From positions 124,001 through 188,000 of IMG/VR virus record IMGVR_UViG_3300010399_000031: a DNA stretch of 64,000 bases; one strand, 5' to 3'. Under the pieces are notes generated by a model, which ran no database searches, had not been told where the DNA came from, and saw only the letters and a list, made by a program, of their open reading frames with translations. Positions 6,698 through 58,805 of this stretch are shown piece after piece (position 1 is the stretch's first letter; each line of letters opens with the position of its first letter). A program made the position numbers and the translations under genes.

Positions 6698-6725
6698 GGG
6701 AGGGCTCCGTGCCCTCCCTTTTTAT
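6698..6725 (+). terminator. rho-independent terminator
   Basis: GGGAGGGC-tccgt-GCCCTCCC followed by T run. Confidence 0.75.
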
Positions 6726-6741
6726 TTGTTTAGGGGCACCT

Positions 6742-7542: not shown

Positions 7543-7551
7543 GGATTCGAA

Positions 7552-8409: not shown

Positions 8410-8418
8410 GAGTGAGGT

Positions 8419-9258: not shown

Positions 9259-9260
9259 AA

Positions 9261-10232
9261 ATGGGTATCTACACCAAGACATCGCTGCAAATGGTGGTGG
9301 ACTTGCTCAATGCAAGTAACTCCGGTTTGCCGGTGCCCATCTCGCTATCGAACGTGAAGTTTGGCATCCCCACTGCAATCACTCCCGGTACTGGACAGAT
9401 TCAAGATACCCAAATCAAGGTAATTGCCCTTGCCTCGGGTCAGTATGTGGGCAATCAGTTGCTCACGTATCGTCGCTTAGATTCAACAGTACTCTTTCGC
9501 TCAGTACCGCTACGGGTTGATTTGTATTCAGCTGCGGCCGCCGTCGGGGTGTCACCCTACTCGATGAGTCAGTTGTTGCCGTACATCAACGCCAAGTACG
9601 GTTTGAATCTGCAAACGACTGACATCACCGATGTAGCGTTTGCTGGGTGTACGACCAACGCGCAACCGACCATTGGGTTGGTTGCGGGCTCACTTAACTC
9701 CACAGCACTACTGACCTTTACCACGACCAATACGGCCTGGAAAGGAAGTATCACGGTTTTCTGGGTGCAAGCGCCGCAAGACCTATCGACGCTTTTGGCA
9801 ACCGGTTCGCTGGAAACCGCACTGACATATCCGGGTAACCGCGACGTCGTGAACAACACGGTGTATGTGCCGAACCTGGATACGTACTACGTGGACTTCA
9901 CGGACTACTTGGGTACTGGTGGCAGCAATAGCACCTTGCCAGTTGCGATCGCTAATTCATCGATTACCAATACAGCAAATTACAACACACTCGTTGGTAT
10001 CATCAATACTCTCACGGGTAAGACGTACACCAACGGCGGGGGTGCAGCAGGTAGCACACTCATGGATTTGACGGGTGCAGCCATTTCAGCCGTGATCGAT
10101 CTGACCACAGGCGCGAACCAAGCGCTCTATCCGGAAGCAGATTATCGCTATTACAATCGTTTGCTCGTCATCACGCTTGCAGCGGGTAACACGTGGGGAG
10201 CGGGTCAAATGTTCCTCCACTATAACGTCTAA
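9261..10232 (+). CDS. tail fibre paralog
   Basis: VKFGIP...DTQIKV...YVGNQLLTYRRLD; ends MFLHYNV. Confidence 0.7.
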   Translation: MGIYTKTSLQMVVDLLNASNSGLPVPISLSNVKFGIPTAITPGTGQIQDTQIKVIALASGQYVGNQLLTYRRLDSTVLFRSVPLRVDLYSAAAAVGVSPYSMSQLLPYINAKYGLNLQTTDITDVAFAGCTTNAQPTIGLVAGSLNSTALLTFTTTNTAWKGSITVFWVQAPQDLSTLLATGSLETALTYPGNRDVVNNTVYVPNLDTYYVDFTDYLGTGGSNSTLPVAIANSSITNTANYNTLVGIINTLTGKTYTNGGGAAGSTLMDLTGAAISAVIDLTTGANQALYPEADYRYYNRLLVITLAAGNTWGAGQMFLHYNV

Positions 10233-10241
10233 AGGTGAAGC

Positions 10242-11150
10242 ATGTCCAAGTTTCAATGGCCTTCTGAAAGTGCCTTGTTGGCAGCGATCAATGCGGCCAA
10301 TGGTACCTCGCTGCAACAATCGGACGTGACTTTTTCTGACCCGAAAGTCATCACGGGTGGTACGTGGCAGGGTGTAGCCAGTGACCGTAACACTGCGATT
10401 CAGGTCACGGGTAACGGCACCACGTATAAAGGTAACAAAGTCATTCAGTACAACCGTCGCGACATTTCGCAGATCGTGAACCTGCCCTCGTTTAAGATGG
10501 CGGTCTATGGGATCAATACCGTCTGGGATTTGATTCCCTACTTTGCCTATTGGACCGGGATCAAATTCATCAATGGGGATTTGGTGAACGATGCCGTCAC
10601 GGGTTTGACCGATGGCGCGGGTTCGATCACGGTCAATGTTGACCCGAACTCACTCGGTTGGCAAGGATCCGTGACGATCAACGTCACACAAGGGGGTATC
10701 GGGTTGGATACGGCGGTGCAATCCACAGCACTGACGGGTCTTAACTACCCTGTCTCCGATGCGTCGGCGCCGCCAGCCACTGCCACACAAGGGCCGGTGT
10801 ATCTGTACCCATACGACTTCTCGGCCAATACCTCGACGTATCTGTCATGGACAACCGGGGTGATCACCCAAGCGCAAGCCGATACATTGGTGGCAGCCAT
10901 CAAGGCGGTCGATGTGGGGGCAGGTGCCGCGTTGTGGAACGATGACACCACGACTTCGAATTCGGATTACACGACATGGAACCTCTCGGGTGCCCAGATC
11001 ATCTCCAATGGTCTGAATAACCCGGTCACCATGCCGACCAACCCGAACTACAAGTATGTGATGCAATTGCGCTTGCGAAGCGATGTGACGATTCCGTCCG
11101 GTGACTTGTATTTGCACTACAACGACCCGTTCAATCCGGACACCTTCTAA
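10242..11150 (+). CDS. tail fibre paralog
   Basis: VTFSDP...NTAIQVT...YKGNKVIQYNRRDI; LYLHYND near C-terminus. Confidence 0.7.
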   Translation: MSKFQWPSESALLAAINAANGTSLQQSDVTFSDPKVITGGTWQGVASDRNTAIQVTGNGTTYKGNKVIQYNRRDISQIVNLPSFKMAVYGINTVWDLIPYFAYWTGIKFINGDLVNDAVTGLTDGAGSITVNVDPNSLGWQGSVTINVTQGGIGLDTAVQSTALTGLNYPVSDASAPPATATQGPVYLYPYDFSANTSTYLSWTTGVITQAQADTLVAAIKAVDVGAGAALWNDDTTTSNSDYTTWNLSGAQIISNGLNNPVTMPTNPNYKYVMQLRLRSDVTIPSGDLYLHYNDPFNPDTF

Positions 11151-11200
11151 ACGCCATTTCGGGTTGGGTAAAGTCCCAACCCGTTTAAACGAGGTGTTTA

Positions 11201-12082
11201 ATGTTTCCTTACCAAGCAGCACAGTACGACACCTTCATGGCGCTGGTGCAGGCATCCAATCCCGGATTGATCATTGCCGATCTAAGCGCTGCGCAGCTGC
11301 GTGCGTTGGTACCGTTAGTGATTGCACCTGATTCATTCGGACGAGACACGTCCGTGCGTTTGATGGTGCGCCCCAATAACGTCGAGTACTTCGGTGCTCA
11401 AACCGTCACGTATCGCCGGATTAATCTGGCCGGCTACTTTCGCAGTTTGACTTTGACGCTGGACGATTACATCGGCAGCACGACGATGACGTCGGCTCAG
11501 TTTTGCACTGCATTCAATAACAAATACGGCACCGCGTTGGTAGCAACGGATATCACCAACGCAAGTTTTACTTCGGGGGCGCAGAGCACGGTCACGATTG
11601 CTACGGGGTCGATCTGCTACGAAGGCTCTTTTAGCATCAAATGGACGCAGGGTAAGCAGTACATTAACCAGGTGGTTACTAACCCGGTTCTTGTGGGTCG
11701 ACTTTATCCGGGTGGCAATAACATGCCACCGAGCAAACCGGTAGCGGATTTTCTTACCTACAACCTCGATTGCTCTTCCATCAAAACAGCATTAGCTGCA
11801 TTGACCTCGGGTGCGGTCATCACACCCACTCAGTGGACAACCAATGGTTCAAACTACGCAACGATTCTGAATTTCTTGCAACAAAGTCGCACAGATTTGA
11901 ATTTAAGCGGTAGTGATTCAGCTACCACCGGTGGGTTGGGTAACTTGGTGGTTACACGCTACACGCTACCTTCGGCGAGCTTACCTGGCGCAAACAGTAG
12001 CAAATTTACCGCTGCGGTGACCATTGCTGCGGTAAGTGGTTCCTGGTTTTTGGGTATGTTCTATCTTCACTACACGGCTTAA
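11201..12082 (+). CDS. tail fibre paralog
   Basis: DTSVRL...YFGAQTVTYRRINL; ends FYLHYTA. Confidence 0.7.
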   Translation: MFPYQAAQYDTFMALVQASNPGLIIADLSAAQLRALVPLVIAPDSFGRDTSVRLMVRPNNVEYFGAQTVTYRRINLAGYFRSLTLTLDDYIGSTTMTSAQFCTAFNNKYGTALVATDITNASFTSGAQSTVTIATGSICYEGSFSIKWTQGKQYINQVVTNPVLVGRLYPGGNNMPPSKPVADFLTYNLDCSSIKTALAALTSGAVITPTQWTTNGSNYATILNFLQQSRTDLNLSGSDSATTGGLGNLVVTRYTLPSASLPGANSSKFTAAVTIAAVSGSWFLGMFYLHYTA

Positions 12083-14161: not shown

Positions 14162-15844
14162 ATGGCGATCCACGACATGTGGTCGTATGACCATGCCCCA
14201 CAGTTAGGGACTGATATCTCCAGCGGCACTACGTTGAGTGCATATAGCGAGACCGGGACGTACAACCTTCAAACTGGTTTGCCAGGAATGTTGTACAAGA
14301 ATACAAACGCCACGGGGGTCATCGGAAGTGATGGTTTTTTGAAACTCACCACGGTCAGTGGTAGTAATTCAGCACTTTTGATTCAAGCCAAAGAAGTGCA
14401 GGATTGGAGTGTGGCGACCAAGTACTGGCTTGGTTTTCGCACCAAAACTACTTCGCAAAATGGTGCAGCTTGCAATGTCTTTTCGATTTCAGATTCACTC
14501 GCGGATACGAACTTTCAAGCGTTCATCCAAGAGTCGGATATGACGAGTGCGGGGGCAAACACCGCAAATGTGGAGTACTACGTCGAGGTGATGATTGATC
14601 GCACCAACTTACTCTACGAAGTGTGGATTAACAGTGTAAAAGTCAAAAATGGTTCGATCGCAGTAGCCGCTCTTCCCTCCAGTGGAAATGGTTACTATTG
14701 GTACGGGGCGTATAACTCGCTAAGTGGAGTAACGAACGGTTCAACCCGTTGCTTCAGAGATTTCTATTTCCTCGATGTTGATGTAACAACGCCAAGTCGT
14801 TTGGGTTCAATAAAGTCGAGTTTGCAATCGGTTGCGTCGGCCGCCGCGCCGAACTGGGTCGGAGAAACCGGTACTTTATTGGGAACTGCGGTGATTACCG
14901 CTGCACAATCGAAGTTTGGGGGCGCGTGCTTCACACCTGGTTCGACTGCATCCTCGGCGTTATCTATACCGGATGGTCCAAATGTGAAGTGTCTTAGTGG
15001 TGATTTTACCATTGAAACATTTTGCATGTCAACCAATAATGCGCAAATTGGTGTGTTATTTGGTAAAGACAATGGCTCTGCACCCTATGCGCACTTAACG
15101 TATAACAGCAATCAATGGCAATGGAGCGCCGACAGTTCAGGAGCAATCCTTCTTGCTAGTACAGGGGTTGCTGTCAATACATGGATGCACATCGCCATGG
15201 TGCTGCATAATGGCACTTGGACACTGTATCAAAATGGGGTATCATTGGGAACTGCATCGGGTACTACCTATGGTAATAACTCGTTACCATTTTTGATTGG
15301 TAACTACGGCCCACTTACTAATCAGTGGTTGGGTTACATTGATGAGTTTCGCACCAGTAACATTGCGCGTTATACGGGAGCCTTTACGCCACCGGCTGCA
15401 CCATTCACGGTTGATGCGAATACGCTAATGTTACTGCACTTTGACACCAATGTAAATGGTTTGGTAATAGATAGCGCTCTTTCTGCTTCTGCTGCATTTC
15501 AGCAAGCATACGGGACAGTCAGTGCCAACGTCGGTATCCCGCTTATGGCTAACGCACCGACCGATGACACCATGACGGTGGGGTTCTCCACTAGCTATTC
15601 GAGTAACAAGAACATCTTTGCTGTGGACTTTCGTCTTGCTGCAAAGACTCCCAATTCACCGGCGAGCCTCTCAAGCAGCATTCAGCAGGCAACTAACACC
15701 ACTTCGTTCGGTTCGTACTCGTTCTCGGACGGTAGCATGAACTACGGGCGCCGTTTAGGTCTGACCACCAAAGCCCCAGACGGCGGTGTTTGGACTCCCA
15801 GCAAGATTAGCAGCACGTCACTGCTGATTACCCCGACCAGTTAA
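14162..15844 (+). CDS. virion/tail protein with inserted LamG/ConA-like lectin domain
   Basis: paralog of 13070 plus KFGG...GDFTIE...WMHIAMV...YQNG...IDEFR...ARYT. Confidence 0.7.
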   Translation: MAIHDMWSYDHAPQLGTDISSGTTLSAYSETGTYNLQTGLPGMLYKNTNATGVIGSDGFLKLTTVSGSNSALLIQAKEVQDWSVATKYWLGFRTKTTSQNGAACNVFSISDSLADTNFQAFIQESDMTSAGANTANVEYYVEVMIDRTNLLYEVWINSVKVKNGSIAVAALPSSGNGYYWYGAYNSLSGVTNGSTRCFRDFYFLDVDVTTPSRLGSIKSSLQSVASAAAPNWVGETGTLLGTAVITAAQSKFGGACFTPGSTASSALSIPDGPNVKCLSGDFTIETFCMSTNNAQIGVLFGKDNGSAPYAHLTYNSNQWQWSADSSGAILLASTGVAVNTWMHIAMVLHNGTWTLYQNGVSLGTASGTTYGNNSLPFLIGNYGPLTNQWLGYIDEFRTSNIARYTGAFTPPAAPFTVDANTLMLLHFDTNVNGLVIDSALSASAAFQQAYGTVSANVGIPLMANAPTDDTMTVGFSTSYSSNKNIFAVDFRLAAKTPNSPASLSSSIQQATNTTSFGSYSFSDGSMNYGRRLGLTTKAPDGGVWTPSKISSTSLLITPTS

Positions 15845-15863
15845 GGATTTGAGTGAGTAAATC

Positions 15864-16910
15864 ATGACAAAACGAATGATGTATGCGTTCGACCATATCC
15901 CGGTCACTTTGAGTAGTACTGGTGGTAATGTGTCAGCGTATTGTGATTTTCCATTCACCTACGCACCTAGTGGCGGGCTAAACGCTACTACTGGCGGTAC
16001 CATGTCAGATAGTGACGGTGTATGGTTAGCGTCGAACGCTTATTACTACAACACCGTCACCTCAATGGGGCAGTGGTCACACCCCATCAGTAATGTCTTA
16101 GATATAACCAAAGCACGTAACTGGATCGGTTTTCGATTTAAACCAAGCAGCACCTACATTGGCAACCCTTTTGGTTGCACAGTCAATGGGGTCAACCTAG
16201 CGCTCCTTGCCATTTCGGACTTCAGTTGGACTTCTGGCCACAATTACTACATCGAAGTGATGATTGATCACGTCAATCAAACTCGTTCGGTTTGGGTGGA
16301 TGGCTCGCTAGTTGTAAATGCGCAAGCTGTTTCACTTGCTGGCCAAGTGTCTAGCGATAAGTTGATTTTCGGTTTTTCTGCTGGTATTACGGGTAACACA
16401 AGTTGTACGTATCAGTATAAGGATATGTATTTCATGGATGACCCCAATGATGGTTCTGTCTCGCGTTTAGGACCTATCATTTCCCGTCCAATCACCATCA
16501 ACACAGCCAGCGGTAATGGTTGGACACCATCGTCTGGTTCCATCATTGGAGCGCTTAATACGGCGATCAATACATCGACTCCGTCGACCCCGAATATTGC
16601 ATCGGCAAACGATGGTACACCCCTAGCAATGACACTAGCAAGTACGGTGGATCAAGGAGTAGCTGTGCACGGGGTACTTTTCGTGGCCTCTGGTGAACGC
16701 AATTCCGGCACCGGGACGATGTTGAGATCGACGCTTGCTGATCAAGCGACGCCGGCGAATCAATCAACACTCAACGCGTTGCAGTTTTCAAACACGGCAT
16801 TCCAATATGGTCGCACCATGGGTTTTACACCATTTGCACCAGATGGTAGTACATGGAATGCAACCAAGATTGCGGCGATGAATCTTTCAAGCGTTGCAAG
16901 TGCCACATAA
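15864..16910 (+). CDS. virion/tail protein, second paralog family
   Basis: YAFDHIP...WIGFRF...YYIEVMIDH...KDMYF...SRLGPI. Confidence 0.65.
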   Translation: MTKRMMYAFDHIPVTLSSTGGNVSAYCDFPFTYAPSGGLNATTGGTMSDSDGVWLASNAYYYNTVTSMGQWSHPISNVLDITKARNWIGFRFKPSSTYIGNPFGCTVNGVNLALLAISDFSWTSGHNYYIEVMIDHVNQTRSVWVDGSLVVNAQAVSLAGQVSSDKLIFGFSAGITGNTSCTYQYKDMYFMDDPNDGSVSRLGPIISRPITINTASGNGWTPSSGSIIGALNTAINTSTPSTPNIASANDGTPLAMTLASTVDQGVAVHGVLFVASGERNSGTGTMLRSTLADQATPANQSTLNALQFSNTAFQYGRTMGFTPFAPDGSTWNATKIAAMNLSSVASAT

Positions 16911-16925
16911 GTCGGGAGTGGATTG

Positions 16926-18251
16926 ATGTCAACTACTTTTCGAAAAACCTCAGCGGTTGTCTGGACGCAGGATCCCTCCCCGATTGCGGTTCGGAAAACT
17001 CACGCGTTGGCTTTTGCCAGTGATGTGGGGCTTACATTACGCAACATCCAAGGATTCGCTTTTGAAACCGTACCTCCGGGTATGACGCTACGCAATATTC
17101 AAGGGTTTGCCTTTGAGCGCGCACCACTGGCTATCCCGGTTAATGTTACGGGTGACTTGGCCCTTTACACACTCATCAATAACAATCGGAAACCAGGAGT
17201 ATCGATTACCTGGTCAGCCAGTAACAGCGCGTTAGGAACACCAGTCGCCGACAACACCTATGGTACGACCAATACCCGTATCTCACTTTCTGCCAAATCA
17301 AACAGCGGATACAACGGGTCAGTCAATTTGTTTTATACGCGCCGCTCGATTACTGACGCTGTCTTAGGTTCAGTATCGCTGGGGACGATCTCGTCGGCCA
17401 CGACAGTGGTATCGATGCTACCTACGATCAATTCGAAGTATGGATTGAATCTAACAGCACAGGACGTAGTTGATGGACCGGTAGCGGCTGGTGCGACGTT
17501 TATTACACTTACAATCGCATCATCAAGTTGGGTGTTTTTACCTGGTTCAGTTGTTGCTGTTGGGATCGTTACGAGTTTGGCATCGGCAACGCCCGTTGTG
17601 GATCTACTCGGTTTTGACAACGCGGCCGGGGTGGGGCCGTCGCCGTTTACGAAGGCATTGCTCCATTTCGATGGTAATTTTTCAGATGCTTCTGGCCGAA
17701 TTTGGACAGCAGCGGCCGGAGCAACAACTGAGTCTTCGACGGTTAAATTCGGCAGTGGTGCTTTCCAAAATACAGGGGTGGTTGGGAAATACATCAGCAC
17801 CCCAGACGCCAATGATCTGCATCTAACAGGTGACTTTACAGTCGAGGGGTTTATTAACCCAAATAACATCACTCAGAGTCAAGTTCTAATTATCAAGGGA
17901 TCGGCTTCACCCAACACTGGTGCGCGTTTGATTTTAAGTTCTGGTCAAATTTTCGCTTATGACGACGCTGTAAGTAACCAGATGAGTGGCGGGTCGATCT
18001 CGACAGGAAGTTGGTATCACGTGGCATTGGTTAAATACAACGGTACAGCGACGATCTATGTTGGTGGTAGTCCGGTAGCTAGTAGTACATCATTTGGTAC
18101 CTTCGGTAACAACAATTATCCGCTTTATGTGGGTACGGCGTCCGACGGCTCTTTCCCGATGTATACCACGATGGATGAACTACGTATCAGTGCCGAAGCT
18201 CGTTACAAATCCAGCTTCACACCACCTACGTCGTCGTTCGTGTTCGACTGA
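16926..18251 (+). CDS. tail fibre paralog with C-terminal LamG-like domain
   Basis: internal family-1 domain (LGTP...NTRISL...GYNGSVNLFYTR) then LLHFDG...GDFTVE...WYHVALV...MDELR. Confidence 0.7.
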   Translation: MSTTFRKTSAVVWTQDPSPIAVRKTHALAFASDVGLTLRNIQGFAFETVPPGMTLRNIQGFAFERAPLAIPVNVTGDLALYTLINNNRKPGVSITWSASNSALGTPVADNTYGTTNTRISLSAKSNSGYNGSVNLFYTRRSITDAVLGSVSLGTISSATTVVSMLPTINSKYGLNLTAQDVVDGPVAAGATFITLTIASSSWVFLPGSVVAVGIVTSLASATPVVDLLGFDNAAGVGPSPFTKALLHFDGNFSDASGRIWTAAAGATTESSTVKFGSGAFQNTGVVGKYISTPDANDLHLTGDFTVEGFINPNNITQSQVLIIKGSASPNTGARLILSSGQIFAYDDAVSNQMSGGSISTGSWYHVALVKYNGTATIYVGGSPVASSTSFGTFGNNNYPLYVGTASDGSFPMYTTMDELRISAEARYKSSFTPPTSSFVFD

Positions 18252-18354
18252 TTTTGAACATTTCATCTAAAAAAATAAGGCAATCCTATGCAGGCTGCCT
18301 ATTTAGCGGCCTCATTCCGAGGGCCCCCCCTCTCTTTCCTGATTGGAGTAATCC

Positions 18355-18885
18355 ATGTCAAAAATCGACTCAACCAAGTCAGCCATCGATAACGTGTTGG
18401 TGCTGGTCAATGCCGCTAACAGCACGTCCATTGTCAACACGCAAGTCACGGCTGGTACCCCGACGGCTCAAACCGCAGACGGCCAAGGACGCAACACACA
18501 ACTCACGCTCACAGCGGTAGGTGGACAAGGTTTCACTGGTTCGCAGACCTACACGTACGTGCGACGTGGGTTGAACGATTCGGTTTTGAGTCCAGTTGAC
18601 AGTTACACTGCCGCGCACGGTATCGATGCCACGGCGCTGCTCGACGCACTGTGCACACAACTTGGTCTCGTGAACACGGATGTGCACCTGGAAGATCCAG
18701 CCAATGCTGGAGTGGCACTGTCCGGATCGATCACAGCAGATCAAGCAACACTCGATCTCGTGGCAAACGCCAACTCGCTACTGTACGTGGATGCTTCGAG
18801 CCAGGCCATTACGATGACTTGGACGCACGACCTTGCTGCCGCAACGCCGACCACGGCGCTTACGGGTTTCGACGCAGCCAGTTAA
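18355..18885 (+). CDS. tail fibre paralog (short)
   Basis: AGTP...RNTQLTLT...GFTGSQTYTYVR. Confidence 0.7.
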   Translation: MSKIDSTKSAIDNVLVLVNAANSTSIVNTQVTAGTPTAQTADGQGRNTQLTLTAVGGQGFTGSQTYTYVRRGLNDSVLSPVDSYTAAHGIDATALLDALCTQLGLVNTDVHLEDPANAGVALSGSITADQATLDLVANANSLLYVDASSQAITMTWTHDLAAATPTTALTGFDAAS

Positions 18886-18976
18886 TTATTTGGCGTACTC
18901 AGCAGTTGGGGGATTCCCCCAACTGCTTTTATGCCCCAATCTAATGAAGTCCCTTATCTTTCACTTGGATGTTGAC

Positions 18977-20059
18977 ATGCAAATCGACCCTAGCAAAAGC
19001 GCCATGCAAAATTTGTTGAACTTGATTGACTCGGCCAGTGGTAATAGCGCTGGTCCAACCAATCCCAATCAAGTCACTTATCAAAACCTTCAGGCCGCTA
19101 CCTTAGAAGGCGACGCAGCGGCTAATACTTCGGTTGAACTCGTTGGTGTCACGGACAATGGCTTTACGGGTAATCAAACGTATTACTACGGACGACTTGA
19201 CCCCGCAGCCGAAGTAACTTCTCCAACAAGTCACGCAGTGGTACCGGCTGGCACCACCGATGCACCCACCATCTTGGGAATTGTGGCTAACCATTATGGT
19301 TTTATCGAATCGGAAATTAGTTGGGTGAGTACACCCACCAAACCGAGTACGATGTCCTCCGATCCTACGACTTCCACTCCAGTTGTACAAACAAGCAATT
19401 CGTTGATTTATTTGGATGGGCAAGCAAATATCAATTTGGATTGGCAAGCGTCAACGGTTGCACTGCTCCACTTTGATGGCGATGTTACCGATCAACGCGG
19501 GCACACTGCGACCAATGTGGGGAGTAATACCTGGGCATCCAGCAATAGTGGTCCGATTAAATTCGGCACAGACGCGCTAGGTATTGGAAGTGGTGGTTCG
19601 TGCGTGGAACTCGCCGATCCAGGTGATTTGACGTTCTTGAATAACTTCACAATCGAAAGTGAAGTGTATCTCGCCTCGCACGGGGGTTACCTGTGGGCAA
19701 AAAACGATGGTACAAATTCTTGCTATGCCTTCATGGATAGCACCACAAAAAACTTCAACGTTAAAACGGATACAGCAAGTGTGGTGACGGTTGGTAACTA
19801 TGGTTCAATCCAGAACCAATATAACCATATCGCACTTACCAAAAACGGTACGACTTGGACCGTATGGGTCAACGGGGTGGCTATCGGTACATTCACCAGT
19901 TCGGATAGTTTTGGCAACATCAGTACGTTTTGGACGATCGGTAACATGAACAACGCCAATAACCCGGTTGCCGCTAACCTCGATGAAACTCGCTTTAGCC
20001 GAGTATGTCGTTACACAAGCGCTTTTACCCAACCGAGTGCTGCGTTCACACTCGATTAA
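18977..20059 (+). CDS. tail fibre paralog with C-terminal LamG-like domain
   Basis: N-terminus nearly parallels 18355 gene; LLHFDG...FTIE...YNHIAL...LDETR. Confidence 0.7.
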   Translation: MQIDPSKSAMQNLLNLIDSASGNSAGPTNPNQVTYQNLQAATLEGDAAANTSVELVGVTDNGFTGNQTYYYGRLDPAAEVTSPTSHAVVPAGTTDAPTILGIVANHYGFIESEISWVSTPTKPSTMSSDPTTSTPVVQTSNSLIYLDGQANINLDWQASTVALLHFDGDVTDQRGHTATNVGSNTWASSNSGPIKFGTDALGIGSGGSCVELADPGDLTFLNNFTIESEVYLASHGGYLWAKNDGTNSCYAFMDSTTKNFNVKTDTASVVTVGNYGSIQNQYNHIALTKNGTTWTVWVNGVAIGTFTSSDSFGNISTFWTIGNMNNANNPVAANLDETRFSRVCRYTSAFTQPSAAFTLD

Positions 20060-41780: not shown

Positions 41781-42174
41781 GTGGGAGTTTTACCAGCAGT
41801 TACCCGATTATGCACTTATCGAGATCACACCTGAGTTGCGTTTTCACTACGAGCAAAAATCTTGGTTGTTAAGGAGTGAATACGGGTTTGTTTTTGAAGA
41901 CCTCATTGACGATTGCTTGGCAAGAAGTCTGGTTAAAGAGAACGCAGAAGAAGAGCTTGAAAGTTGGTTTGATGATATCTGCGAAGAACTCTCCGCAAGC
42001 GATTGGATGAACGATAACTCGTTAGAATATCTGAATGCCATTGGAATGCTCTTCACCCATCTTCGTGAACAGATCAACCCCCTTTACACACCCACAGGGT
42101 ATCATCACTACGAATTCACCGGTTGGCTCGATAAACATACGGTGGTATTGACAAAAAGAAGATTTGTAGAGTAA
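41770..42174 (+). CDS. jumbo-phage paralog family protein
   Basis: PDYALIE...IG.LF...LY...G...YEF.GWL; start uncertain. Confidence 0.55.
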   Translation: MHSEWEFYQQLPDYALIEITPELRFHYEQKSWLLRSEYGFVFEDLIDDCLARSLVKENAEEELESWFDDICEELSASDWMNDNSLEYLNAIGMLFTHLREQINPLYTPTGYHHYEFTGWLDKHTVVLTKRRFVE

Positions 42175-53361: not shown

Positions 53362-54060
53362 ATGACGACTTCATCAGTTGAAACTACACTTCAGTCGCTT
53401 ATGGATGCGATTGTCTCCGGGGAATTCGAATACGGCGTGCCGCCGCAAGACGTGTTGGCGTTGCGCTACAATGTCAGTCGGACCGTGCTGCGCGAAGCGA
53501 TTGCCAAGTTGGAAGCCAACAACGTCTTGGACTCGCGCCCCAAGATCGGCACCAAGGTCAAACCGCGTAGCGAGTGGCTCTTGATCAACCAGATCATCTC
53601 GCAAAACTACTTCAAGAACAATTCCAGCAAGCAGCAGTTGGGTGATACGTTGGACTTGTTCTACACGGCGGGGTCTCACGCCGCGTACCTGACGAGCGGG
53701 CGCATCGAATCCGTGCTCGAAATCTTTCCACCATTTGAGTTCGATGTTCAAGGTGTTGCCGAGATGCACCGGTGGATCTTCGAGAAATGCGGTAACGCCA
53801 TCTACGCACAGATGGGTACTCTCATGGAGGAGTTCATCTTGGCAACTGCGGATGCGGCTGGACTGGAGAACCCGAAGTCCACGAATCTGTACTACCACCG
53901 CAACATCTACTCGATACTCGCAGGAGAGAAGCACCCCAAGACCATGGAGTTTTTACGCCAAGCGTATTCGAATCTTTACCACTCGATGTATCAGTGCATT
54001 TTCTCCGAGTCCACTAAACCGGTCTTCCGAGATACACCGAAAGAAGAGAAGGTGTCTTAA
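53362..54060 (+). CDS. GntR (FadR-type) transcriptional regulator
   Basis: IVSGEF...LALRYNVSRTVLREAI..LEA...L.SRPKIGT.V.PRSEW. Confidence 0.85.
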   Translation: MTTSSVETTLQSLMDAIVSGEFEYGVPPQDVLALRYNVSRTVLREAIAKLEANNVLDSRPKIGTKVKPRSEWLLINQIISQNYFKNNSSKQQLGDTLDLFYTAGSHAAYLTSGRIESVLEIFPPFEFDVQGVAEMHRWIFEKCGNAIYAQMGTLMEEFILATADAAGLENPKSTNLYYHRNIYSILAGEKHPKTMEFLRQAYSNLYHSMYQCIFSESTKPVFRDTPKEEKVS

Positions 54061-54119: not shown

Positions 54120-54746
54120 ATGAGAATCCCGATCGATAGTGTTTCAAAGAAACCGGTGTGGTGGGCGTGGGGAGATGGCGGTCACAAAGTTGTGAGTGAC
54201 TTCGCGGGTAAGAGGATTGTAGCGGTTCAGCCTAAGGTGCCGGGTCAATTGAATAATCCGCTCCCGCAATGGTCAACAAATATGGAAGAGCTTACAGCGA
54301 TGCCGAAGAATTACTCCGGCTGGGTGTTGAAGCATCATGAGAGAAAACAAACGATCGAGGAGTTCAACCAAGGAATAGCGGTAGTCGAGTACGACTATGC
54401 TTACTTCTTCCTGCGTCGTCTCGAAGATGTAACTGAAAATCGCATCGTTATCAAGCTCAACAACGTACAGCTTTACGAGATGCGCAGCGCCCGTAAGAGT
54501 TTTCTTGAATTGACTGACAAGGAAGACGATGAATTGGTCAAACCGATGCTCACCTCAGAGGTTGCACTTTACGATGAAGATTTGAAATTCATCGGAAGTA
54601 TCAATCCTTTTTATTCTATCAATAGCGGTGGGTTCGATTCGATAGAAATCTTGATCGATACTCGCAGCGCCGAGCAGATTGCAGCAAGCGATGCTGCGTG
54701 GGAGCGTAGTGAGCGCGAGCGGGTAGCGCGCGGTGCGTTGATGTAA
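54120..54746 (+). CDS. hypothetical protein
   Basis: GAGGTG RBS, 208 aa. Confidence 0.65.
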   Translation: MRIPIDSVSKKPVWWAWGDGGHKVVSDFAGKRIVAVQPKVPGQLNNPLPQWSTNMEELTAMPKNYSGWVLKHHERKQTIEEFNQGIAVVEYDYAYFFLRRLEDVTENRIVIKLNNVQLYEMRSARKSFLELTDKEDDELVKPMLTSEVALYDEDLKFIGSINPFYSINSGGFDSIEILIDTRSAEQIAASDAAWERSERERVARGALM

Positions 54747-54764
54747 AACGATTGACAGCATATT

Positions 54765-54795
54765 GGGAGGAAATACTCCTCCCTCTTTTTTTTTT
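54765..54795 (+). terminator. terminator insulating the array operon
   Basis: GGGAGGA...TCCTCCC + T10. Confidence 0.75.
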
Positions 54796-54803
54796 GTCTA
54801 TTC

Positions 54804-54828
54804 TAGAAAATTTGAGACATATATAACT
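54804..54828 (+). promoter_or_regulatory. putative phage early promoter motif (copy 3), array leader
   Basis: TAGAAAATTTGAGACATATATAACT, about 20 nt before first array unit. Confidence 0.55.
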
Positions 54829-54846
54829 TACTGGATTAGACTAGGT

Positions 54847-55755
54847 ATTTAATCAAACTCCAACAAACACCCAATAAGTATTAGTGTATCAAATTGCCGT
54901 AATCATCCATTGTTGGACAGTGTATCATTGAAAGAATAATCACTCATTAGCCATTAGTGTATCAATCGCATATATTCACCCAGGTGACGTAAGTGTATCA
55001 ATCAGCCCCATTCACCCATTGGAATAAAGTGTATCAATGTCCAATAACCACCCACTGCTTACTAGTGTATCACAGTGAACTAGACACCCAATCGAGAATA
55101 GTGTACCACGTTACGGTATTCACCCAATGGATGCGAGTGTATCAATGCAAGCCATACATCCAAACAAAGAAAGTGCGTCAAGATACCAGAACCACACAGT
55201 ACGAGGTAACGCATCAAACAAGGCAAAACATCCATCGTGAAAGAGTGTATCAGTCGACCCAATCACCCATTGAAGGAAAATGAGACGTATCGGATTAGAC
55301 AACCCGTGATGGCCATCGAATCAAGGACCTCAATTCATCCAGAAAAGGAAAGTGCATCAATGGAACGAAGTCGCCCAAGAGAGTAAAATGTATCAGAAGA
55401 GGTGAATCGCCCGTGGTTATTCAATGTATCAAACGGCCACAGTCACCCAGTATAGCGGAGTGCATCAATAGCAGACATTCACACAAGGTGGGTCAGTGTA
55501 TCATGGAAAGTTAATTACCCATGGCATGAGAGTGTATTAGAGGATCAAAGACATCCAATCCCAAGCAATGTATCATAGTAGGGAATTCACCCAGTTGGAA
55601 CAAATGTATCAAAATGTCGTATTCACCCATTCTTTGAAAATGCACCATCACCCCTTATTCATCCACCAAAAGGAAGTGTATCAAGAAGCACAACTCACCC
55701 ATTGGGTTGTAGTGTATCAACAGCAGCAATTCACCCAATGCGATACAGTGTCGCC
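54847..55755 (+). ncRNA. TIGR-like dual-repeat guide RNA array (25 x ~36-bp units plus partial terminal repeat)
   Basis: period 36 nt: ARTGYATCA - 9-nt spacer - A(T/A/G)TCACCCA - 9-nt spacer; repeat A starts at 54883, 54919, 54956, 54992 ... 55675, 55711, 55747; reading frames interrupted by stops; directly 5' of Nop-domain gene. Confidence 0.88.
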
Positions 55756-55812
55756 CACCACGACACACTAAGAAACCATTTTTATTCGAACTAAAGAAAG
55801 GAATAGAGCACC

Positions 55813-57066
55813 ATGAGCCAAGAAACGATTATCCCCACATACAACCCGAACATCTCCGTGATTCGCACGATGGTGCGCTCAGCTTACGACATGCAACTGT
55901 TGCGCATCCAGATGGGCAACCGCGTGACCGCCAGCTTCAAAGTCAAGCTCGGCCTTCGCCAAGACGGCATGAGTGAGAAGGACCTCGAAAAGCAAGAAAA
56001 GGGTCTACTCGATCAGCTACGTGCTTCTTACGCCCGCATCACCGACGGCATCATCGAAGAGCATGGTGAAGACATCAAGGTCAAGAAGTTGCCGACTGAA
56101 AAGAAGTTCGTCGGCGATGAGCTGATTACCCACTACAGCGAATTGTTGCTCGTAGATAACTACCTGGCTACGCTCAGGAATGAAGAGCGACATTTCAAGG
56201 ACATGGAGAAGATCCTAAAGAAGATCCCGGTCTACACCGAGTTCCTCGAAAACGTTCGTGGTATTGGTCCAGCCATGGCGGGCGTGATCATCTCCGAGAT
56301 TGACATCTACAAGGCGCAGTATCCGTCTAGCCTTTGGATGTTGGCAGGGCTCGATGTCGTTCACGTCGGTAAGTACACCGACGATAAAGGGGTCGAGCGC
56401 ACAGTGCGGGGTTGGGAGATCGACCAATGGTACTCCAACGACCAGAACATCGATAAGGAGTTCCTCGCTGAAGGCAAGTACCCGGTTCACTTCGAAGCCC
56501 ATGGTCGTTCGCGTAAAGAGTTTTGTCTCGTGCGACGCACCTACGTCAACAAAGCGGGTGAGCAAAGTGAGCGTGACTCAATCACGTTCAATCCGTTTCT
56601 GAAGACGAAGTTGGTCGGGGTGCTCGGCACGTCTTTCTTGCGTGCTGGTATCGCAACGGTTGATGGTAAGAAGACCGGTGGTGCGGCTCGCTTGGCACTT
56701 GCCAAGGCAGAAGGGTTCGATCCGAAGGATTACGTTGAGATGGACGAAGATCAAGCAGTGATCGTCTACCTACGTGCTAAGGGTCACGAGGTTGTGGTGG
56801 AGCCGAGCCCTTACTCGGTGATTTACAACAACTACAAGAACCGTCTGAACAACGATCCGCGTCACATCGAGAAGAGCGCGCTTCACAAGCACAACATGGC
56901 CATTCGCTACATGGTCAAGCGTTTTCTGGTTGACCTCTATAACCACTGGCGTAAGCTGGAAGGTTTGGTTGTCGCCCCGGAGTATTCGGAAGGGGTACTC
57001 GGCAAAGTACACGGTGAAGCTAAGGAAGCTGGTTGGCAACATCCGCGCTATCGTAGGTCCGCTTAA
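55813..57066 (+). CDS. TasA-like Nop-domain RNA-guided protein (IS110 C-terminal/Nop56-58-related), no RuvC or HNH
   Basis: coiled N-terminus (YDMQ.LRI..GNR), L..VRGIGP..AG.IISEID...PSSLW..AGL, FNPFLKTKL, H..A.R..VK.FL.DLY..WR.LEG; 57 nt after array. Confidence 0.82.
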   Translation: MSQETIIPTYNPNISVIRTMVRSAYDMQLLRIQMGNRVTASFKVKLGLRQDGMSEKDLEKQEKGLLDQLRASYARITDGIIEEHGEDIKVKKLPTEKKFVGDELITHYSELLLVDNYLATLRNEERHFKDMEKILKKIPVYTEFLENVRGIGPAMAGVIISEIDIYKAQYPSSLWMLAGLDVVHVGKYTDDKGVERTVRGWEIDQWYSNDQNIDKEFLAEGKYPVHFEAHGRSRKEFCLVRRTYVNKAGEQSERDSITFNPFLKTKLVGVLGTSFLRAGIATVDGKKTGGAARLALAKAEGFDPKDYVEMDEDQAVIVYLRAKGHEVVVEPSPYSVIYNNYKNRLNNDPRHIEKSALHKHNMAIRYMVKRFLVDLYNHWRKLEGLVVAPEYSEGVLGKVHGEAKEAGWQHPRYRRSA

Positions 57067-57093
57067 ATCCAGTCATTCAGAGAGGAATTTACC

Positions 57094-57468
57094 ATGAGCA
57101 TCAAAGAACTTCTGGAACCGTTTCAAGTCGACGCTGAACAGCAACCGATTACACCCGAAGTGTTTTTTGCACGAAGCTTTCAAGTCGCATTGAGGGACCT
57201 GAATATCACTTCGGTGAAATGGGACGAACTGATGTCGGCGTATCTGGAGAAACACTTCGCTGCACAAGGGGTGGTGGCAACTCGTGCAGATATTAAATCT
57301 GCACGAGCAAACCTCTCGAAGCAACTGTGCGAACTGAACATGTCGTGGAAAGTCTATCTGAAGGGCATGGAAATGCTCGGCTTCGATATGGTCAATATCC
57401 GACTTGCTGGCGTCAAGCAGGAAGAGGTCCAGACTACCTTGGGATTAGCGGTTAAGCTTCCTCAATAA
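57094..57468 (+). CDS. conserved jumbo-phage hypothetical protein
   Basis: GAGGA RBS; ANL.KQL...NMSWKVY.KG motif. Confidence 0.65.
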   Translation: MSIKELLEPFQVDAEQQPITPEVFFARSFQVALRDLNITSVKWDELMSAYLEKHFAAQGVVATRADIKSARANLSKQLCELNMSWKVYLKGMEMLGFDMVNIRLAGVKQEEVQTTLGLAVKLPQ

Positions 57469-57490: not shown

Positions 57491-57520
57491 GAGAGCTTCG
57501 GCTCTCCCTTTTCTTTTTTT
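57491..57520 (+). terminator. terminator GAGAGC-TTCG-GCTCTC (copy 3) closing array/tas operon
   Basis: hairpin plus T run. Confidence 0.75.
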
Positions 57521-57582: not shown

Positions 57583-57924
57583 ATGAGTGAGAGAAAGTTG
57601 TTTGGAATCGGTCAACGTGTGACCCACTTCGACGGGGGTCCAGGTACGCATGGTAAAGGTACGATCGTCGCTTATAACGGTGTGAAGCCAGATAGCTATG
57701 CGGCTAAGAATCCCGCTAAGGCAGCTGAATTAGTGGCTGGGTGTTTTACTGACCCGAAACTGAAAGAAGCGATGGCGGGCGCTTTGGTCAACAGCTTCTA
57801 CGATGGTGATCGATATCCCTACGTCGTACAGTGGGATCCGCGTGTCGACGATAGCGACATCGCGCGGAAATACCCGAATGGGTACAAAGACGTCTACGGT
57901 GACGAACTCAAACCCATCGAGTGA
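57583..57924 (+). CDS. hypothetical protein
   Basis: AAGGGA RBS, 113 aa. Confidence 0.7.
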   Translation: MSERKLFGIGQRVTHFDGGPGTHGKGTIVAYNGVKPDSYAAKNPAKAAELVAGCFTDPKLKEAMAGALVNSFYDGDRYPYVVQWDPRVDDSDIARKYPNGYKDVYGDELKPIE

Positions 57925-57950
57925 AAAAATCTTCGATTGACGACATAAGT

Positions 57951-57972
57951 GGGGACTCCGTAAGGAGTCCCC
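57951..57972. terminator. bidirectional hairpin between convergent genes
   Basis: GGGGACTCC-gtaa-GGAGTCCCC. Confidence 0.7.
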
Positions 57973-57977
57973 AAACG

Positions 57978-58727
57978 TTACTCTATCGACGTAACGCTCC
58001 AGAAGTCTTCAGCCAGATCTGGCGAAAGGACATAGTCGAAGGGCAGGTAGAAGTAACCATTTTCACCCCAGCCCGATCCCCAGCTATTCCTAATAATGAA
58101 GAGACGCTTGATGCGATCGTAACCGACGATCAACACGGCGTGACCACCCAAGCATTGTTCCTTGTTCACATCGGGCATGGGTACCAAACCGCTGGCTGCC
58201 ACTTCGTCCGATTCGAGCGAATCGTAGACGTAGATGCCAAAGGCGATCGGGTAACCCGATGCAAGCGCGTGCAAAAGGTCGTCTTCGGTTTGATTCACAC
58301 GGCGGTACGCAATCGCTTTGTGTTTCAAAGCGTCGTTGTACGCTTCGAGCGAGGGCTTCAGTTTGAAGTTTTCCTCGACGTACGGACACAGCGTTTCGTT
58401 GCAGGTACCCAGCTGTGCGATCACTTTGATGCCGTCGCGGATCTCGGCACCCGAGTCTTCCGTGAGTGTGCCTTCGAGACCGCGCTCGCCGTAGTAGACG
58501 AAAAGGCGCGAGAGACGAATCGGTTGCTCACGCTGTTTGTTCTCGTCGTACTCCAGCGCCCCGACGATGGCGTGGGCCGTGCACGAACCCAACTCACCTT
58601 GGTCTTCGACCGGGGAGCAGCCAGGGCGCAAATCGATCTGGTCGGGAATATCGATCGGTGCAGCTGCCGAGTATTTGTGGTCACGCGGATCGTGTTTGTC
58701 TTTGACACGATTGTACAGTCGCTTCAT
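57978..58727 (-). CDS. papain-family (C1A) cysteine peptidase
   Basis: DQGELGSCTAHA (catalytic Cys), GGHAVLIVGY (His), IRNSWG..WGENGY (Asn). Confidence 0.92.
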   Translation of the reverse strand: MKRLYNRVKDKHDPRDHKYSAAAPIDIPDQIDLRPGCSPVEDQGELGSCTAHAIVGALEYDENKQREQPIRLSRLFVYYGERGLEGTLTEDSGAEIRDGIKVIAQLGTCNETLCPYVEENFKLKPSLEAYNDALKHKAIAYRRVNQTEDDLLHALASGYPIAFGIYVYDSLESDEVAASGLVPMPDVNKEQCLGGHAVLIVGYDRIKRLFIIRNSWGSGWGENGYFYLPFDYVLSPDLAEDFWSVTSIE

Positions 58728-58805
58728 GTTTCACCTTAAGCGTAGCGTTGAAGTGGGATACTTCATACGATCGCATTAACTTTTTATATCGAGAAGGAAC
58801 AAATC

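What the first reader, a model, noticed from the sequence alone, without database searches (positions are those of the whole stretch)
55813..57066. Nuclease-less TasA with two large insertions: silencer or recruiter rather than cutter
Seen: no N-terminal DEDD RuvC, no HNH, and no IS110 SG catalytic-serine loop after the AGL motif. Instead there appear to be two extra segments, after AGL (DVVHVGKY...RRTYVNKAG) and after SFLR (GIATVDG...EVVVEPS). Known: TasA lacks a nuclease, whereas TasR and TasH carry RuvC and HNH. Inference: the protein could block transcription or replication at targets or dock a partner via these insertions, making it a compact programmable DNA binder.
Basis: partly seen in the sequence, partly recalled or inferred. 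Interest (0 to 1): 0.8.

Follow-up and report, generated by a model that had tools for sequence, protein, structure and literature searches.

The report
Jumbo-phage TasA with two inserted domains
This soil jumbo-phage gene encodes a nuclease-free, RNA-guided DNA-binding protein (TasA) beside its 25-unit guide-RNA array; it carries two extra folded domains at known variable sites of the family, so it is a sub-type of a recently described system, not a new kind.

Summary
ORF 55813-57066 (+, 417 aa) is a solo-Nop TIGR-associated protein (TasA). It has no RuvC or HNH domain and no IS110-type serine loop. A 25-unit, 36-nt dual-repeat TIGR array lies directly upstream (54847-55751). Its best sequence and fold matches are the solved TasR and TasH structures.

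Both extra segments are real. Against compact TasA they are a 34-aa domain at the tip of the wedge hairpin (residues 196-229) and a 50-aa domain at the published "insertion 1" site (residues 280-329). Both fold confidently but match no known fold.

They are not peculiar to this protein. About a third of the sampled TasA clusters carry the same pair, many of them on contigs of 100-315 kb. Each domain has been lost separately in nested lineages. The same sites vary widely across TasA.

The "silencer, not cutter" reading matches 2025-2026 experiments on other TasA proteins, so it is not new, and it is untested here. Partner docking has no support: no neighbouring gene is conserved and the wedge-tip domain evolves fast. 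Natural targets could not be found.

By-product: six homologue clusters carry an intein exactly at the AGLD motif.

Verdict: a new structural variant of a known kind, of moderate to low interest.

The parts
54765..54790 (+). Intrinsic terminator of the upstream gene (54120-54746). It marks the start of a separate array-tasA unit.
   Evidence: A 7-bp GC-rich stem followed by a T-run; sequence seen.
54802..54828 (+). 27-nt element between the terminator and the array; candidate phage promoter or array leader.
   Evidence: A second exact copy lies about 128 kb away in the same phage genome, in contigs of runs X1 and X3. There is no other copy in the window. A TATAT(A/T)AC-like motif also precedes or lies near the arrays of L003, L007 and L008. 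The promoter role is inferred.
54847..55751 (+). Dual-repeat TIGR array of 25 units of 36 nt: edge repeat AGTGTATCA, 9-nt spacer A, loop repeat ATTCACCCA, 9-nt spacer B. One unit has 37 nt and one has 35 nt. The repeats are degenerate in units 55172-55340. The first edge repeat is truncated at its 5' end and the last at its 3' end.
   Evidence: units verified against the sequence; 15 matches against 0.05 expected. The transcribed strand is inferred from the family-wide AG...[C/T]CA pattern on the tasA-sense strand.
55747..55790 (+). 3'-truncated edge repeat merging into a hairpin (AGTGTCG / CGACACT) followed by ATTTTTATT; possible array terminator or attenuator before tasA.
   Evidence: Read directly. 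The terminator scan does not call it, because the T-run starts 11 nt after the stem.
55813..57066 (+). tasA, 417 aa: coiled-coil dimerisation helices (residues 12-46 and 108-135, with an extra helix and linker at 47-107), a helix-hairpin-helix CTD ending in AGLD (136-181), the wedge (182-255), CTD helices, and a C-terminal Y/H loop.
   Evidence: AF2 model with pLDDT 82.4 and pTM 0.73; Foldseek to TasH and TasR at probability 1.0; HMM to 9mty at 1e-17; PHROG 4285 at 8e-28.
56398..56499 (+). Insert W (residues 196-229): an extra strand-helix-strand module at the tip of the wedge beta-hairpin. It is net acidic and fast-evolving.
   Evidence: Gap against compact TasA P0209. The site maps onto the TaTasR wedge G210-K230. 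Sub-model pLDDT is 94.9. Mean charge is -2.4. Identity is 28% in distant clade members against 46-82% for the core segments.
56650..56799 (+). Insert I (residues 280-329): a beta-alpha-alpha-beta module at the published "insertion 1" site (TaTasR Q247-T249). R293, A297, G301 and L320 are conserved.
   Evidence: P0111 lacks it naturally.
56983..57012 (+). Y391...H400, aligned to the Y289/H296 tigRNA-processing dyad of SpTasH (the spacing is 2 residues longer).
   Evidence: Alignment to 21kl_A. H400 is invariant and Y391 at least 90% conserved in A1, and both are conserved in nearly all 150 cluster representatives. Dyad defined.
57491..57506 (+). Terminator after the small ORF 57094-57468; possible end of an array-tasA-ORF transcript.
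   Evidence: The ORF is not conserved next to tasA in relatives.

Best explanation
This is a complete dual-repeat TIGR-TasA module of a soil jumbo phage.

Proposed mechanism:
1. The array is transcribed on the + strand, probably from the 27-nt element at 54802-54828.
2. TasA binds the precursor as a coiled-coil dimer and cuts it within the edge repeats with its Y391/H400 dyad. This yields 36-nt tigRNAs of the form half edge, spacer A, loop, spacer B, half edge.
3. The RNP recognises 18-bp DNA sites of the form spacer A + reverse complement of spacer B, pairing one spacer to each strand.
4. Having no nuclease, it stays bound and acts as a roadblock to transcription, and perhaps to replication.

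The two extra domains are lineage-specific decorations of two known variable sites. Insert W sits at the tip of the wedge, the element that in TasR separates the DNA strands at the unwinding junction. Insert I sits at the "insertion 1" site, which in solved complexes lies inside the tigRNA figure-eight between the spacers. They most likely modulate or stabilise the R-loop complex, or enlarge the roadblock; they are unlikely to supply a new catalytic activity.

Shown here: the identity of the protein, the array, the lack of a nuclease, the presence and positions of the inserts, and their spread across the family. Inferred by homology: processing, binding and repression. Speculative: the role of the inserts.
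For: Family membership:
- Foldseek top ten hits are all TasH or TasR complexes (probability 1.0, TM-target 0.48-0.71).
- A profile HMM hits TaTasR 9mty at 1.1e-17 and TasH at 2.6e-8.
- NCBIfam TIGR_Tas_endo scores 1.9e-26.

Array and processing:
- Adjacent 25-unit array of 36-nt period with 9-nt spacers.
- Relatives with and without the inserts all have 36-nt arrays, so the inserts do not track guide length.
- The Y/H processing dyad is conserved.

No nuclease or recombinase residues.

Published experiments on relatives:
- TasA binds 36-nt tigRNAs (PMC12045711).
- MbTasA binds its target without cleaving it and represses transcription reversibly.
- FpTasA-VPR and PlTasA-VPR activate reporters.

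The inserts:
- They map onto published structural landmarks.
- The basic, conserved GRSRK / NPFLKTK core flanks them (+5.9 mean charge), while the inserts themselves are acidic or neutral.
- The family is large and the gene intact: 1827 clusters at 50% identity.

The locus is identical in soil metagenomes of 2017 and 2023.
Against: - No RNA data exist for this phage; no RNA run was listed. Transcription, strand and processing are therefore inferred.
- No natural target was found. In the 64-kb window the only near-site has 2 mismatches, with about 0.07 expected by chance. Relatives' guides do not hit the window. 18-mer scans of IMG/VR gave 1, 1, 1 and 0 hits against 0 and 1 for wrong-geometry decoys.
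- The loop repeat has a degenerate box D, and several central units are decayed.
- The protein scores just under NCBIfam's cut-off (93.4 against 100 bits).
- The repression experiments were done on stem-loop TasA, not on a dual-repeat TasA with these inserts.
- The position of the inserts in the complex is transferred from alignments, not from a superposition or a complex model.
Confidence: 0.62

Rival explanations
1. Recruiter model: the RNP binds DNA, and insert W and/or insert I dock a trans-acting phage or host protein (a nuclease, a polymerase factor, a ParB-like protein), so the effect at the target is not simple steric blocking.
For: - Both inserts are well-folded independent modules (pLDDT 94.9) with no nucleic-acid-binding signature.
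- Insert W is acidic and fast-evolving, as expected for a protein-protein or arms-race surface.
- In TasH, a hairpin at another variable site recruits the nuclease domain.
- Some TasA loci are operonic with ParB-like genes.
Against: - No gene is conserved next to tasA across relatives.
- No ParB, nuclease or integrase is among the neighbours.
- The inserts are lost singly or together in nested lineages that keep the array system.
- Neither insert matches any known interaction domain.
Confidence: 0.15
2. R-loop clamp model: the enlarged wedge and insert I replace the DNA-holding role that dead RuvC domains keep in inactive TasR. They grip the displaced strands or flanking duplex, giving tighter or longer-lived binding than compact TasA. 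This is a sub-case of the best explanation, listed because it predicts a different phenotype for the deletions.
For: - The wedge separates the strands at the junction in TasR.
- Inactive RuvC domains retain strong DNA contacts.
- Weak hits of the wedge profile to the ArgR DNA-binding domain (E 0.026, 0.06 and 0.52).
- R293 in insert I and the GRSRK motif at the wedge base are conserved.
Against: - Insert W is net acidic (-2.4) and insert I about neutral.
- The predicted fold is beta-rich, not a winged helix, and Foldseek gives no ArgR or other DNA-binding match.
- Compact TasA such as FpTasA already works as a DNA binder.
Confidence: 0.15
3. IS110-like recombinase or other catalytic activity hidden in the inserts (cutter or recombinase after all).
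For: - PHROG and UniProt-style annotations call the family "transposase".
- PF02371 hits relatives.
- S233 in GRSRK is conserved.
Against: - PF02371 matches only the helix-hairpin-helix half (profile positions 2-43 to 66 of 87) and never the serine loop.
- There is no DEDD domain and no SG.
- GRSRK belongs to the ordinary wedge, which is also present in compact forms.
- The inserts carry no conserved acidic, His or Ser constellation.
Confidence: 0.03
4. Decaying or idle module: the array and gene are relics without current function in this phage.
For: - Several central units have degenerate repeats and two have off-length spacers.
- No targets were found.
- There was no spacer turnover over about six years.
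Against: - The 417-aa ORF is intact, with all core motifs and the Y/H dyad.
- 15 units match the repeat consensus at 3 or fewer mismatches.
- The clade is large and is retained in many phage contigs of 100-315 kb.
Confidence: 0.05

Closest known systems
FpTasA (Flavonifractor plautii TasA, prototype dual-repeat TasA; Faure et al. 2025, PMC12045711)
   Same: Solo Nop protein without a nuclease. Motifs are shared along the whole length (LRIxxGNR, YxRITD, GxGP, AGLDV, YxxKDG, NPFLKTKLVGVLG, FLR, YxYKNRL, the Y/H loop). It is associated with a 36-nt dual-repeat array with 9-nt spacers.
   Different: FpTasA has 293 aa. Its wedge has 21 aa where ours has 61, and it has 3 aa where ours has the 54-aa segment (by eye). 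Our array is upstream of the gene; the FpTIGR array used in the experiments is downstream.
TaTasR (PDB 9MTY) and SpTasH (PDB 9W04, 9VZX, 21KL)
   Same: Best sequence and fold matches: the same coiled-coil plus Nop CTD scaffold, the wedge, and the Y/H loop (TasH).
   Different: They carry N-terminal RuvC or HNH nucleases and cut both strands; ours has no such domain. Their wedge has 21 aa and their insertion 1 has 3 aa (TaTasR numbering).
MbTasA and PlTasA (stem-loop TasA; bioRxiv 2026.09.09.750476 and 2026.08.11.744272)
   Same: Nuclease-less. They have been shown experimentally to bind targets and to repress or, as fusions, activate transcription. They carry accessory hairpins or insertions around the guide-binding region.
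   Different: [quoted passage not shown] Ours is a dual-repeat system that has the dyad. In stem-loop clades the insertions co-vary with longer RNA stems, whereas here the guide stays at 36 nt.
IS110-family RNA-guided recombinases (IS621, IS110)
   Same: A distantly related helix-hairpin-helix / Nop-like RNA-binding domain ending in a (A/F)GL motif.
   Different: No DEDD RuvC domain, no catalytic Ser-Gly loop, no bridge RNA and no transposon ends.
Archaeal Nop5 / box C/D snoRNP
   Same: Coiled-coil dimer plus Nop domain; weak fold resemblance (Foldseek E about 0.5, probability 0.6-0.87).
   Different: No fibrillarin-binding N-terminal domain, no K-turn or L7Ae partner, and the target is DNA, not RNA.

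Membership tests
TIGR-Tas, TasA subtype | Nop-type fold (coiled-coil dimerisation helices plus a helix-hairpin-helix C-terminal domain) related to solved Tas proteins | tested here: met
   Foldseek to TasH and TasR at probability 1.0, TM-target 0.48-0.71; hmmsearch E 1.1e-17 to 9mty and 2.6e-8 to TasH.
TIGR-Tas, TasA subtype | Adjacent TIGR array: two alternating 8-12-nt repeats separated by ~9-nt spacers, 36-nt unit | tested here: met
   25 units at 54847-55751, 9+9+9+9 nt; 15 matches against 0.05 expected.
TIGR-Tas, TasA subtype | Box D at the start and box C (CCA-like) at the end of both repeats, on the transcribed strand | tested here: inconclusive
   Edge repeat: AG...TCA. Loop repeat: A[U/A/G]...CCA. 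The same AG...[C/T]CA pattern is seen on the tasA-sense strand in 12 or more related loci. However, the loop box D is degenerate, and the strand has not been confirmed by RNA data.
TIGR-Tas, TasA subtype | No nuclease domain (this separates TasA from TasR and TasH) | tested here: met
   Only about 11 residues precede the coiled coil. No Pfam or NCBIfam nuclease hit. The TasR N-terminal 108 residues have no counterpart.
TIGR-Tas, TasA subtype | Y/H tigRNA-processing dyad of dual-repeat systems | tested here: met
   Y391 aligns to SpTasH Y289. H400 is invariant but lies 2 residues further along than H296. Its catalytic role is inferred.
TIGR-Tas, TasA subtype | Array expressed and processed into 36-nt tigRNAs bound by the protein | not testable with these tools
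   No RNA run was listed for this sequence.
TIGR-Tas, TasA subtype | Guide-dependent binding of 18-bp DNA targets | not testable with these tools
   This needs EMSA or a reporter assay. No natural target could be identified.
NCBIfam NF052498 "TIGR-Tas system RNA-guided endonuclease" (equivalog) | Score at or above the curated cut-off of 100 bits | tested here: not met
   93.4 bits in two stretches (E 1.9e-26). The match is split by the inserts. The model's name implies a nuclease, which this protein lacks.
IS110-family recombinase | N-terminal DEDD RuvC-like domain | tested here: not met
   The NF033542 alignment starts at profile position 120; no N-terminal domain is present.
IS110-family recombinase | Catalytic serine (SG loop) after the GL motif | tested here: not met
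   No SG dipeptide in the protein. PF02371 matches in relatives stop before that part of the profile. IS110 comparison sequence.
Box C/D Nop5 / Nop56/58 | Fibrillarin-binding N-terminal domain and significant similarity to the Nop domain (PF01798) | tested here: not met
   No PF01798 hit. Foldseek to Nop5 gives only E 0.45-1.6 over about 180 columns.

The most novel reading that the evidence does not exclude
The W+I clade is a functionally distinct TasA subclass of jumbo phages. In it, the wedge-tip and insertion-1 domains, which have no relatives of known fold, act together as a platform at the DNA-unwinding junction, either clamping the R-loop in place of the missing nuclease domain or docking a phage or host factor. 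The RNP would then do more than passive blocking, for example targeted recruitment, exclusion of competitor phages, or timing of phage genes. Their fast evolution would reflect an arms race.
Probability: 0.15. Interest if true: 0.6.

Novelty: new variant of a known kind. Interest (0 to 1): 0.35.

Why it matters
TIGR-Tas systems were described only in 2025, and nuclease-free TasA is their commonest and least understood effector. This locus does three things.

1. It gives a clean, complete natural example in a jumbo phage: candidate leader element, 25 guides and the effector gene.
2. It shows that dual-repeat TasA proteins are not uniformly compact. In the relatives sampled here, four sites vary: wedge 18-155 aa, insertion 1 4-78 aa, insertion 2 up to 168 aa, and coiled-coil linker up to 92 aa. 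A recent survey described the dual-repeat Nop core as having minimal variation.
3. Nature has already made the deletion controls: clade members lacking one insert, the other, or both. This makes the role of the inserts directly testable.

For tool building the compact 285-293-aa relatives are more attractive. The inserts could still mark sites that tolerate grafted domains.

The inteins at the AGLD motif single out that motif as functionally critical.

Tried and rejected
Fold and family of the inserts:
- Pfam on 57 insert-region sequences gave only scattered noise and no SAP, HeH or wHTH family.
- Foldseek of a high-confidence sub-model against the PDB gave a best E of 0.5 (WWE and SSB-like noise). 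Against BFVD the only hit was a compact TasA, through the shared core.
- ESM Atlas searches on both parts gave scores below 0.9 and only TasA / IS110-like or unnamed phage clusters.
- The wedge profile hits the ArgR N-terminal domain at E 0.026-0.5. The predicted secondary structure and Foldseek do not support this, so it is kept only as a lead.

Natural targets:
- The geometry spacer A + rc(spacer B) was derived from the published 8-nt 3' overhang.
- The window scan gave one 2-mismatch site, at 10262-10279 inside a virion-protein gene. About 0.07 are expected by chance, and its perfect version is absent from IMG/VR.
- Guides of four related phages against the window gave nothing.
- Three exact 18-mers gave one IMG/VR hit each on unrelated contigs, the same rate as decoys.

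Other checks:
- Spacer conservation between phages with 79%-identical TasA: none beyond background, apart from one partial case. This is uninformative, because silent sites are saturated at that distance.
- Embedded tigRNA units inside tasA, as reported for BlTasA: none.
- Rfam: no family.
- Megablast against GenBank phages: no match.
- RNA-seq evidence: no run listed.
- A second copy of the 27-nt leader could not be fetched from IMG/VR; only the window's own site came back.

The comparison with it is by eye. P0209, a compact TasA of the same length, served as the computed stand-in.
Full report
**What is there**

The ORF at 55813-57066 on the + strand is real: 417 aa, ATG start, preceded by AAAGGAA. 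The 900 bases upstream are not coding. They form a 36-nt-period array of two alternating 9-nt repeats, AGTGTATCA and ATTCACCCA, separated by 9-nt variable spacers.

I verified 25 units from 54847 to 55751 against the sequence. The pattern edge-N9-loop with up to 3 mismatches occurs 15 times in the array, against 0.05 expected in shuffles. It occurs once elsewhere in the window, a lone 3-mismatch hit at 42096.

This is the architecture of a dual-repeat TIGR array as defined by Faure et al. 2025 (PMC12045711). The first edge repeat is truncated at its 5' end. The last is truncated at its 3' end and runs into a hairpin followed by a T-rich stretch.

The window is part of a 243-kb soil phage contig, IMGVR_UViG_3300010399_000031. 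It has jumbo-phage virion genes, and 85 of 89 ORFs lie on one strand.

**Identity of the protein**

- Pfam gives nothing significant.
- PHROG 4285 ("transposase") matches at 8e-28.
- NCBIfam's TIGR-Tas model matches at 1.9e-26, but at 93.4 bits it is just under the 100-bit cut-off, and the match is in two stretches.
- Against PDB sequences, the only real hits are TaTasR (9mty; 3e-8 alone, 1.1e-17 with a family profile) and SpTasH.
- An AlphaFold2 model built on 33 homologues has pLDDT 82.4 and pTM 0.73. Its ten best Foldseek matches are all TasH or TasR complexes at probability 1.0. Nop5 follows far behind.

Only about 11 residues precede the first coiled-coil helix, and TaTasR residue 123 aligns to our residue 24. 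The RuvC or HNH position is therefore simply absent.

The IS110 model aligns from its position 120 onward only. The protein has no SG dipeptide, whereas IS110 enzymes read ...GLTPRKFTSG... after the equivalent GL motif.

The C-terminal loop carries Y391 and H400. They are aligned to, and conserved like, the Y289/H296 tigRNA-processing dyad that marks dual-repeat systems. The protein is a TasA.

**The two segments**

A BLASTP alignment with a compact 293-aa TasA (P0209) leaves two clean gaps: residues 196-229 (34 aa) and 280-329 (50 aa).

I combined the residue ranges published for TaTasR (wedge G210-K230, insertion 1 Q247-T249, insertion 2 V267-S269) with the HMM alignment.

- The first segment is an enlargement of the wedge loop.
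- The second segment sits exactly at "insertion 1".

In solved complexes the wedge separates the two DNA strands at the unwinding junction. Insertion 1 lies inside the tigRNA loop between the two spacers.

A sub-model of residues 176-338, built on 57 sequences, is very confident (pLDDT 94.9). Insert W adds a strand-helix-strand module to the wedge hairpin. Insert I is a beta-alpha-alpha-beta module.

Neither insert has a detectable relative:

- Pfam finds none.
- The PDB finds none by fold.
- BFVD finds none.
- The ESM Atlas finds none.
- A borderline sequence resemblance of the wedge to the ArgR DNA-binding domain (E 0.026) is not backed by the predicted fold.

**How common are they?**

The family is large. 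There are at least 1966 hits at 90% clustering, many on contigs of 100-285 kb. There are 1827 clusters at 50% identity, 435 of them below 1e-30.

I aligned the best 150 cluster representatives.

| Site | Ground state | Range seen |
|---|---|---|
| Wedge | 19 aa | up to 155 aa |
| Insertion 1 | 4-5 aa | up to 78 aa |
| Insertion 2 | 13 aa | up to 168 aa |
| Linker between the coiled-coil helices | 19 aa | up to 92 aa |

The window's combination (about 60 aa plus about 56 aa) occurs in 63 of 171 sequences.

On a tree built from core columns only, these 63 are strongly clustered. That tree is FastTree and many forks are weakly supported, so it is a guide and not proof. Nested within them are:

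- forms that lack only W (P0088 and P0130),
- a form that lacks only I (P0111),
- forms that lack both (P0209; possibly P0214, which pairs with one W+I form outside the main cluster).

Elsewhere both sites change state many times: at least 30 changes for the wedge and 16 for insertion 1.

The inserts are therefore standard in a large clade found largely on jumbo-size phage contigs. They are not standard in all Tas proteins, and they are separable. [quoted passage not shown]

Within the clade, insert W is the least conserved folded part (59% identity in close relatives and 28% in distant ones) and is net acidic (-2.4). Insert I is intermediate (77% and 39%) and has a conserved arginine. The wedge base and the following helix are strongly basic (+5.9).

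All related loci examined, with or without the inserts, have 36-nt arrays. The inserts therefore do not accommodate longer guides, unlike the insertions of stem-loop Tas proteins.

**Strand and transcription**

Across related loci oriented by tasA, both repeats read AG...[C/T]CA on the tasA-sense strand. This agrees with box D at the start and box C at the end, and it places the window's tigRNAs on the + strand.

A terminator closes the upstream gene at 54765-54790. Between it and the array lies a 27-nt element (54802-54828). A second exact copy lies about 128 kb away in the same genome. It is a candidate promoter; this is an inference.

No RNA data set holds this sequence.

The locus is identical in soil metagenomes of 2017 and 2023 apart from one SNP and one T-run indel. 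No spacer was gained or lost in that time.

**Function**

By homology the protein should process its array and bind 18-bp targets without cutting them. This has been shown for other TasA proteins:

- They bind 36-nt tigRNAs.
- MbTasA binds targets and represses transcription reversibly.
- TasA-VPR fusions activate reporters.

The "silencer" reading is therefore reasonable but already published. It is untested for a dual-repeat TasA with these inserts.

For partner recruitment I found no support. The flanking genes differ among relatives. The GntR-type regulator at 53362-54060, the ORF at 54120-54746 and the ORF at 57094-57468 are all absent next to tasA in relatives. No ParB, integrase or nuclease gene is nearby.

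Targets remain unknown, as the field also reports for most TIGR spacers.

**By-product**

Six long homologue clusters (672-879 aa) contain a Hint plus LAGLIDADG intein. It is inserted precisely between ...SSLWKY and the AGLD motif, whose alanine becomes the +1 cysteine. Neither of the two papers in the library that contain both "intein" and "TIGR-Tas" appears from its title or abstract to concern this (both are general reviews; I did not read them).

**Verdict**

- The object is a structurally decorated sub-type of a known system.

Noticed in passing
homologues P0124, P0139, P0160, P0163, P0177, P0179 (site corresponds to window residues 177/178, nt ~56342-56347): Six TasA homologue clusters (672-879 aa) carry a Hint + LAGLIDADG intein. 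It is inserted exactly before the conserved AGLD motif (junctions ...Y|CFP... and ...VHN|CGLD). It occurs in both compact and insert-bearing forms. Neither of the two library papers that contain both 'intein' and 'TIGR-Tas' appears from its title or abstract to concern it (both are general reviews; not read).
   Followed up: partly
window 54802-54828: A 27-nt element just upstream of the array has a second exact copy about 128 kb away in the same phage genome (seen in contigs of two runs). A TATAT(A/T)AC-like motif also lies upstream of or near the arrays in L003, L007 and L008. It is a candidate phage promoter. The second copy could not be fetched.
   Followed up: partly
window 10262-10279 (+), inside ORF 10242-11150 (PHROG 1037 virion structural protein): This is the only near-target of any window tigRNA. 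Unit 55208 matches in the correct geometry, with spacer A at 9/9 and spacer B at 7/9, 20 nt into the gene. About 0.07 such hits are expected by chance, and the perfect 18-mer is absent from IMG/VR, so it is probably chance.
   Followed up: yes
window 55172-55340 and units at 54919, 55244: The middle of the array has decayed repeats (for example AACGCATCA, AATGAGACG, AGACAACCC). One unit has 37 nt and one has 35 nt. These guides may be non-functional.
   Followed up: no
alignment of 150 cluster representatives (P0121-P0267): TasA relatives vary at four sites: wedge 18-155 aa, insertion 1 4-78 aa, insertion 2 mostly 13 and up to 168 aa, and coiled-coil linker up to 92 aa, in many combinations. 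The nature of the other large inserts (for example the 155-aa wedge of P0228 and the 168-aa insertion 2 of P0205) was not examined.
   Followed up: partly
window 57978-58727 (-): A papain-family (C1) cysteine peptidase gene lies on the minus strand, one of only about four minus-strand genes in the window. It is conserved downstream of tasA in the five closest jumbo-phage relatives (49-51% identity). An overlapping + strand ORF (57921-58739) is probably spurious.
   Followed up: partly
window 53362-54060 (+): A GntR-family transcription regulator gene (Pfam 7.8e-10) lies two genes upstream of tasA. It is not conserved at this position in relatives.
   Followed up: partly
window 54600-57200 in runs X1, X2 (2017) and X3 (2023): The same phage locus occurs in at least three soil metagenome runs (2017 and 2023; some may be the window's own source sample). 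The only differences are one SNP (56628 C>T, in tasA) and a 1-nt T-run indel (54786). The array did not change.
   Followed up: yes
window residues ~195-255 of TasA (nt ~56395-56577): A family profile of the wedge region gives ArgR N-terminal DNA-binding domains as the three top PDB sequence hits (E 0.026, 0.06, 0.52), with a shared V-T-x3-V-[SG]-R-x2-K-E-x2-L-V-K pattern. The predicted fold and Foldseek do not agree. This is unresolved.
   Followed up: partly
window 6709-12082 and 14162-20059: There are runs of paralogous virion-structural genes. One run is six tandem ORFs of 277-325 aa, of which only 10242-11150 was tested (PHROG 1037). The other is larger proteins that share a C-terminal module with baseplate-wedge-like PHROGs.
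   Followed up: no
window 42096-42122 (+): An isolated sequence resembles one edge-N9-loop unit at 3 mismatches. It has no neighbouring units and is probably chance.
   Followed up: no
loci L001-L031: In the insert-bearing relatives (L001-L008) the array lies upstream of tasA. In most compact relatives it lies downstream, and some loci (L010, L022) have arrays on both sides.
   Followed up: partly
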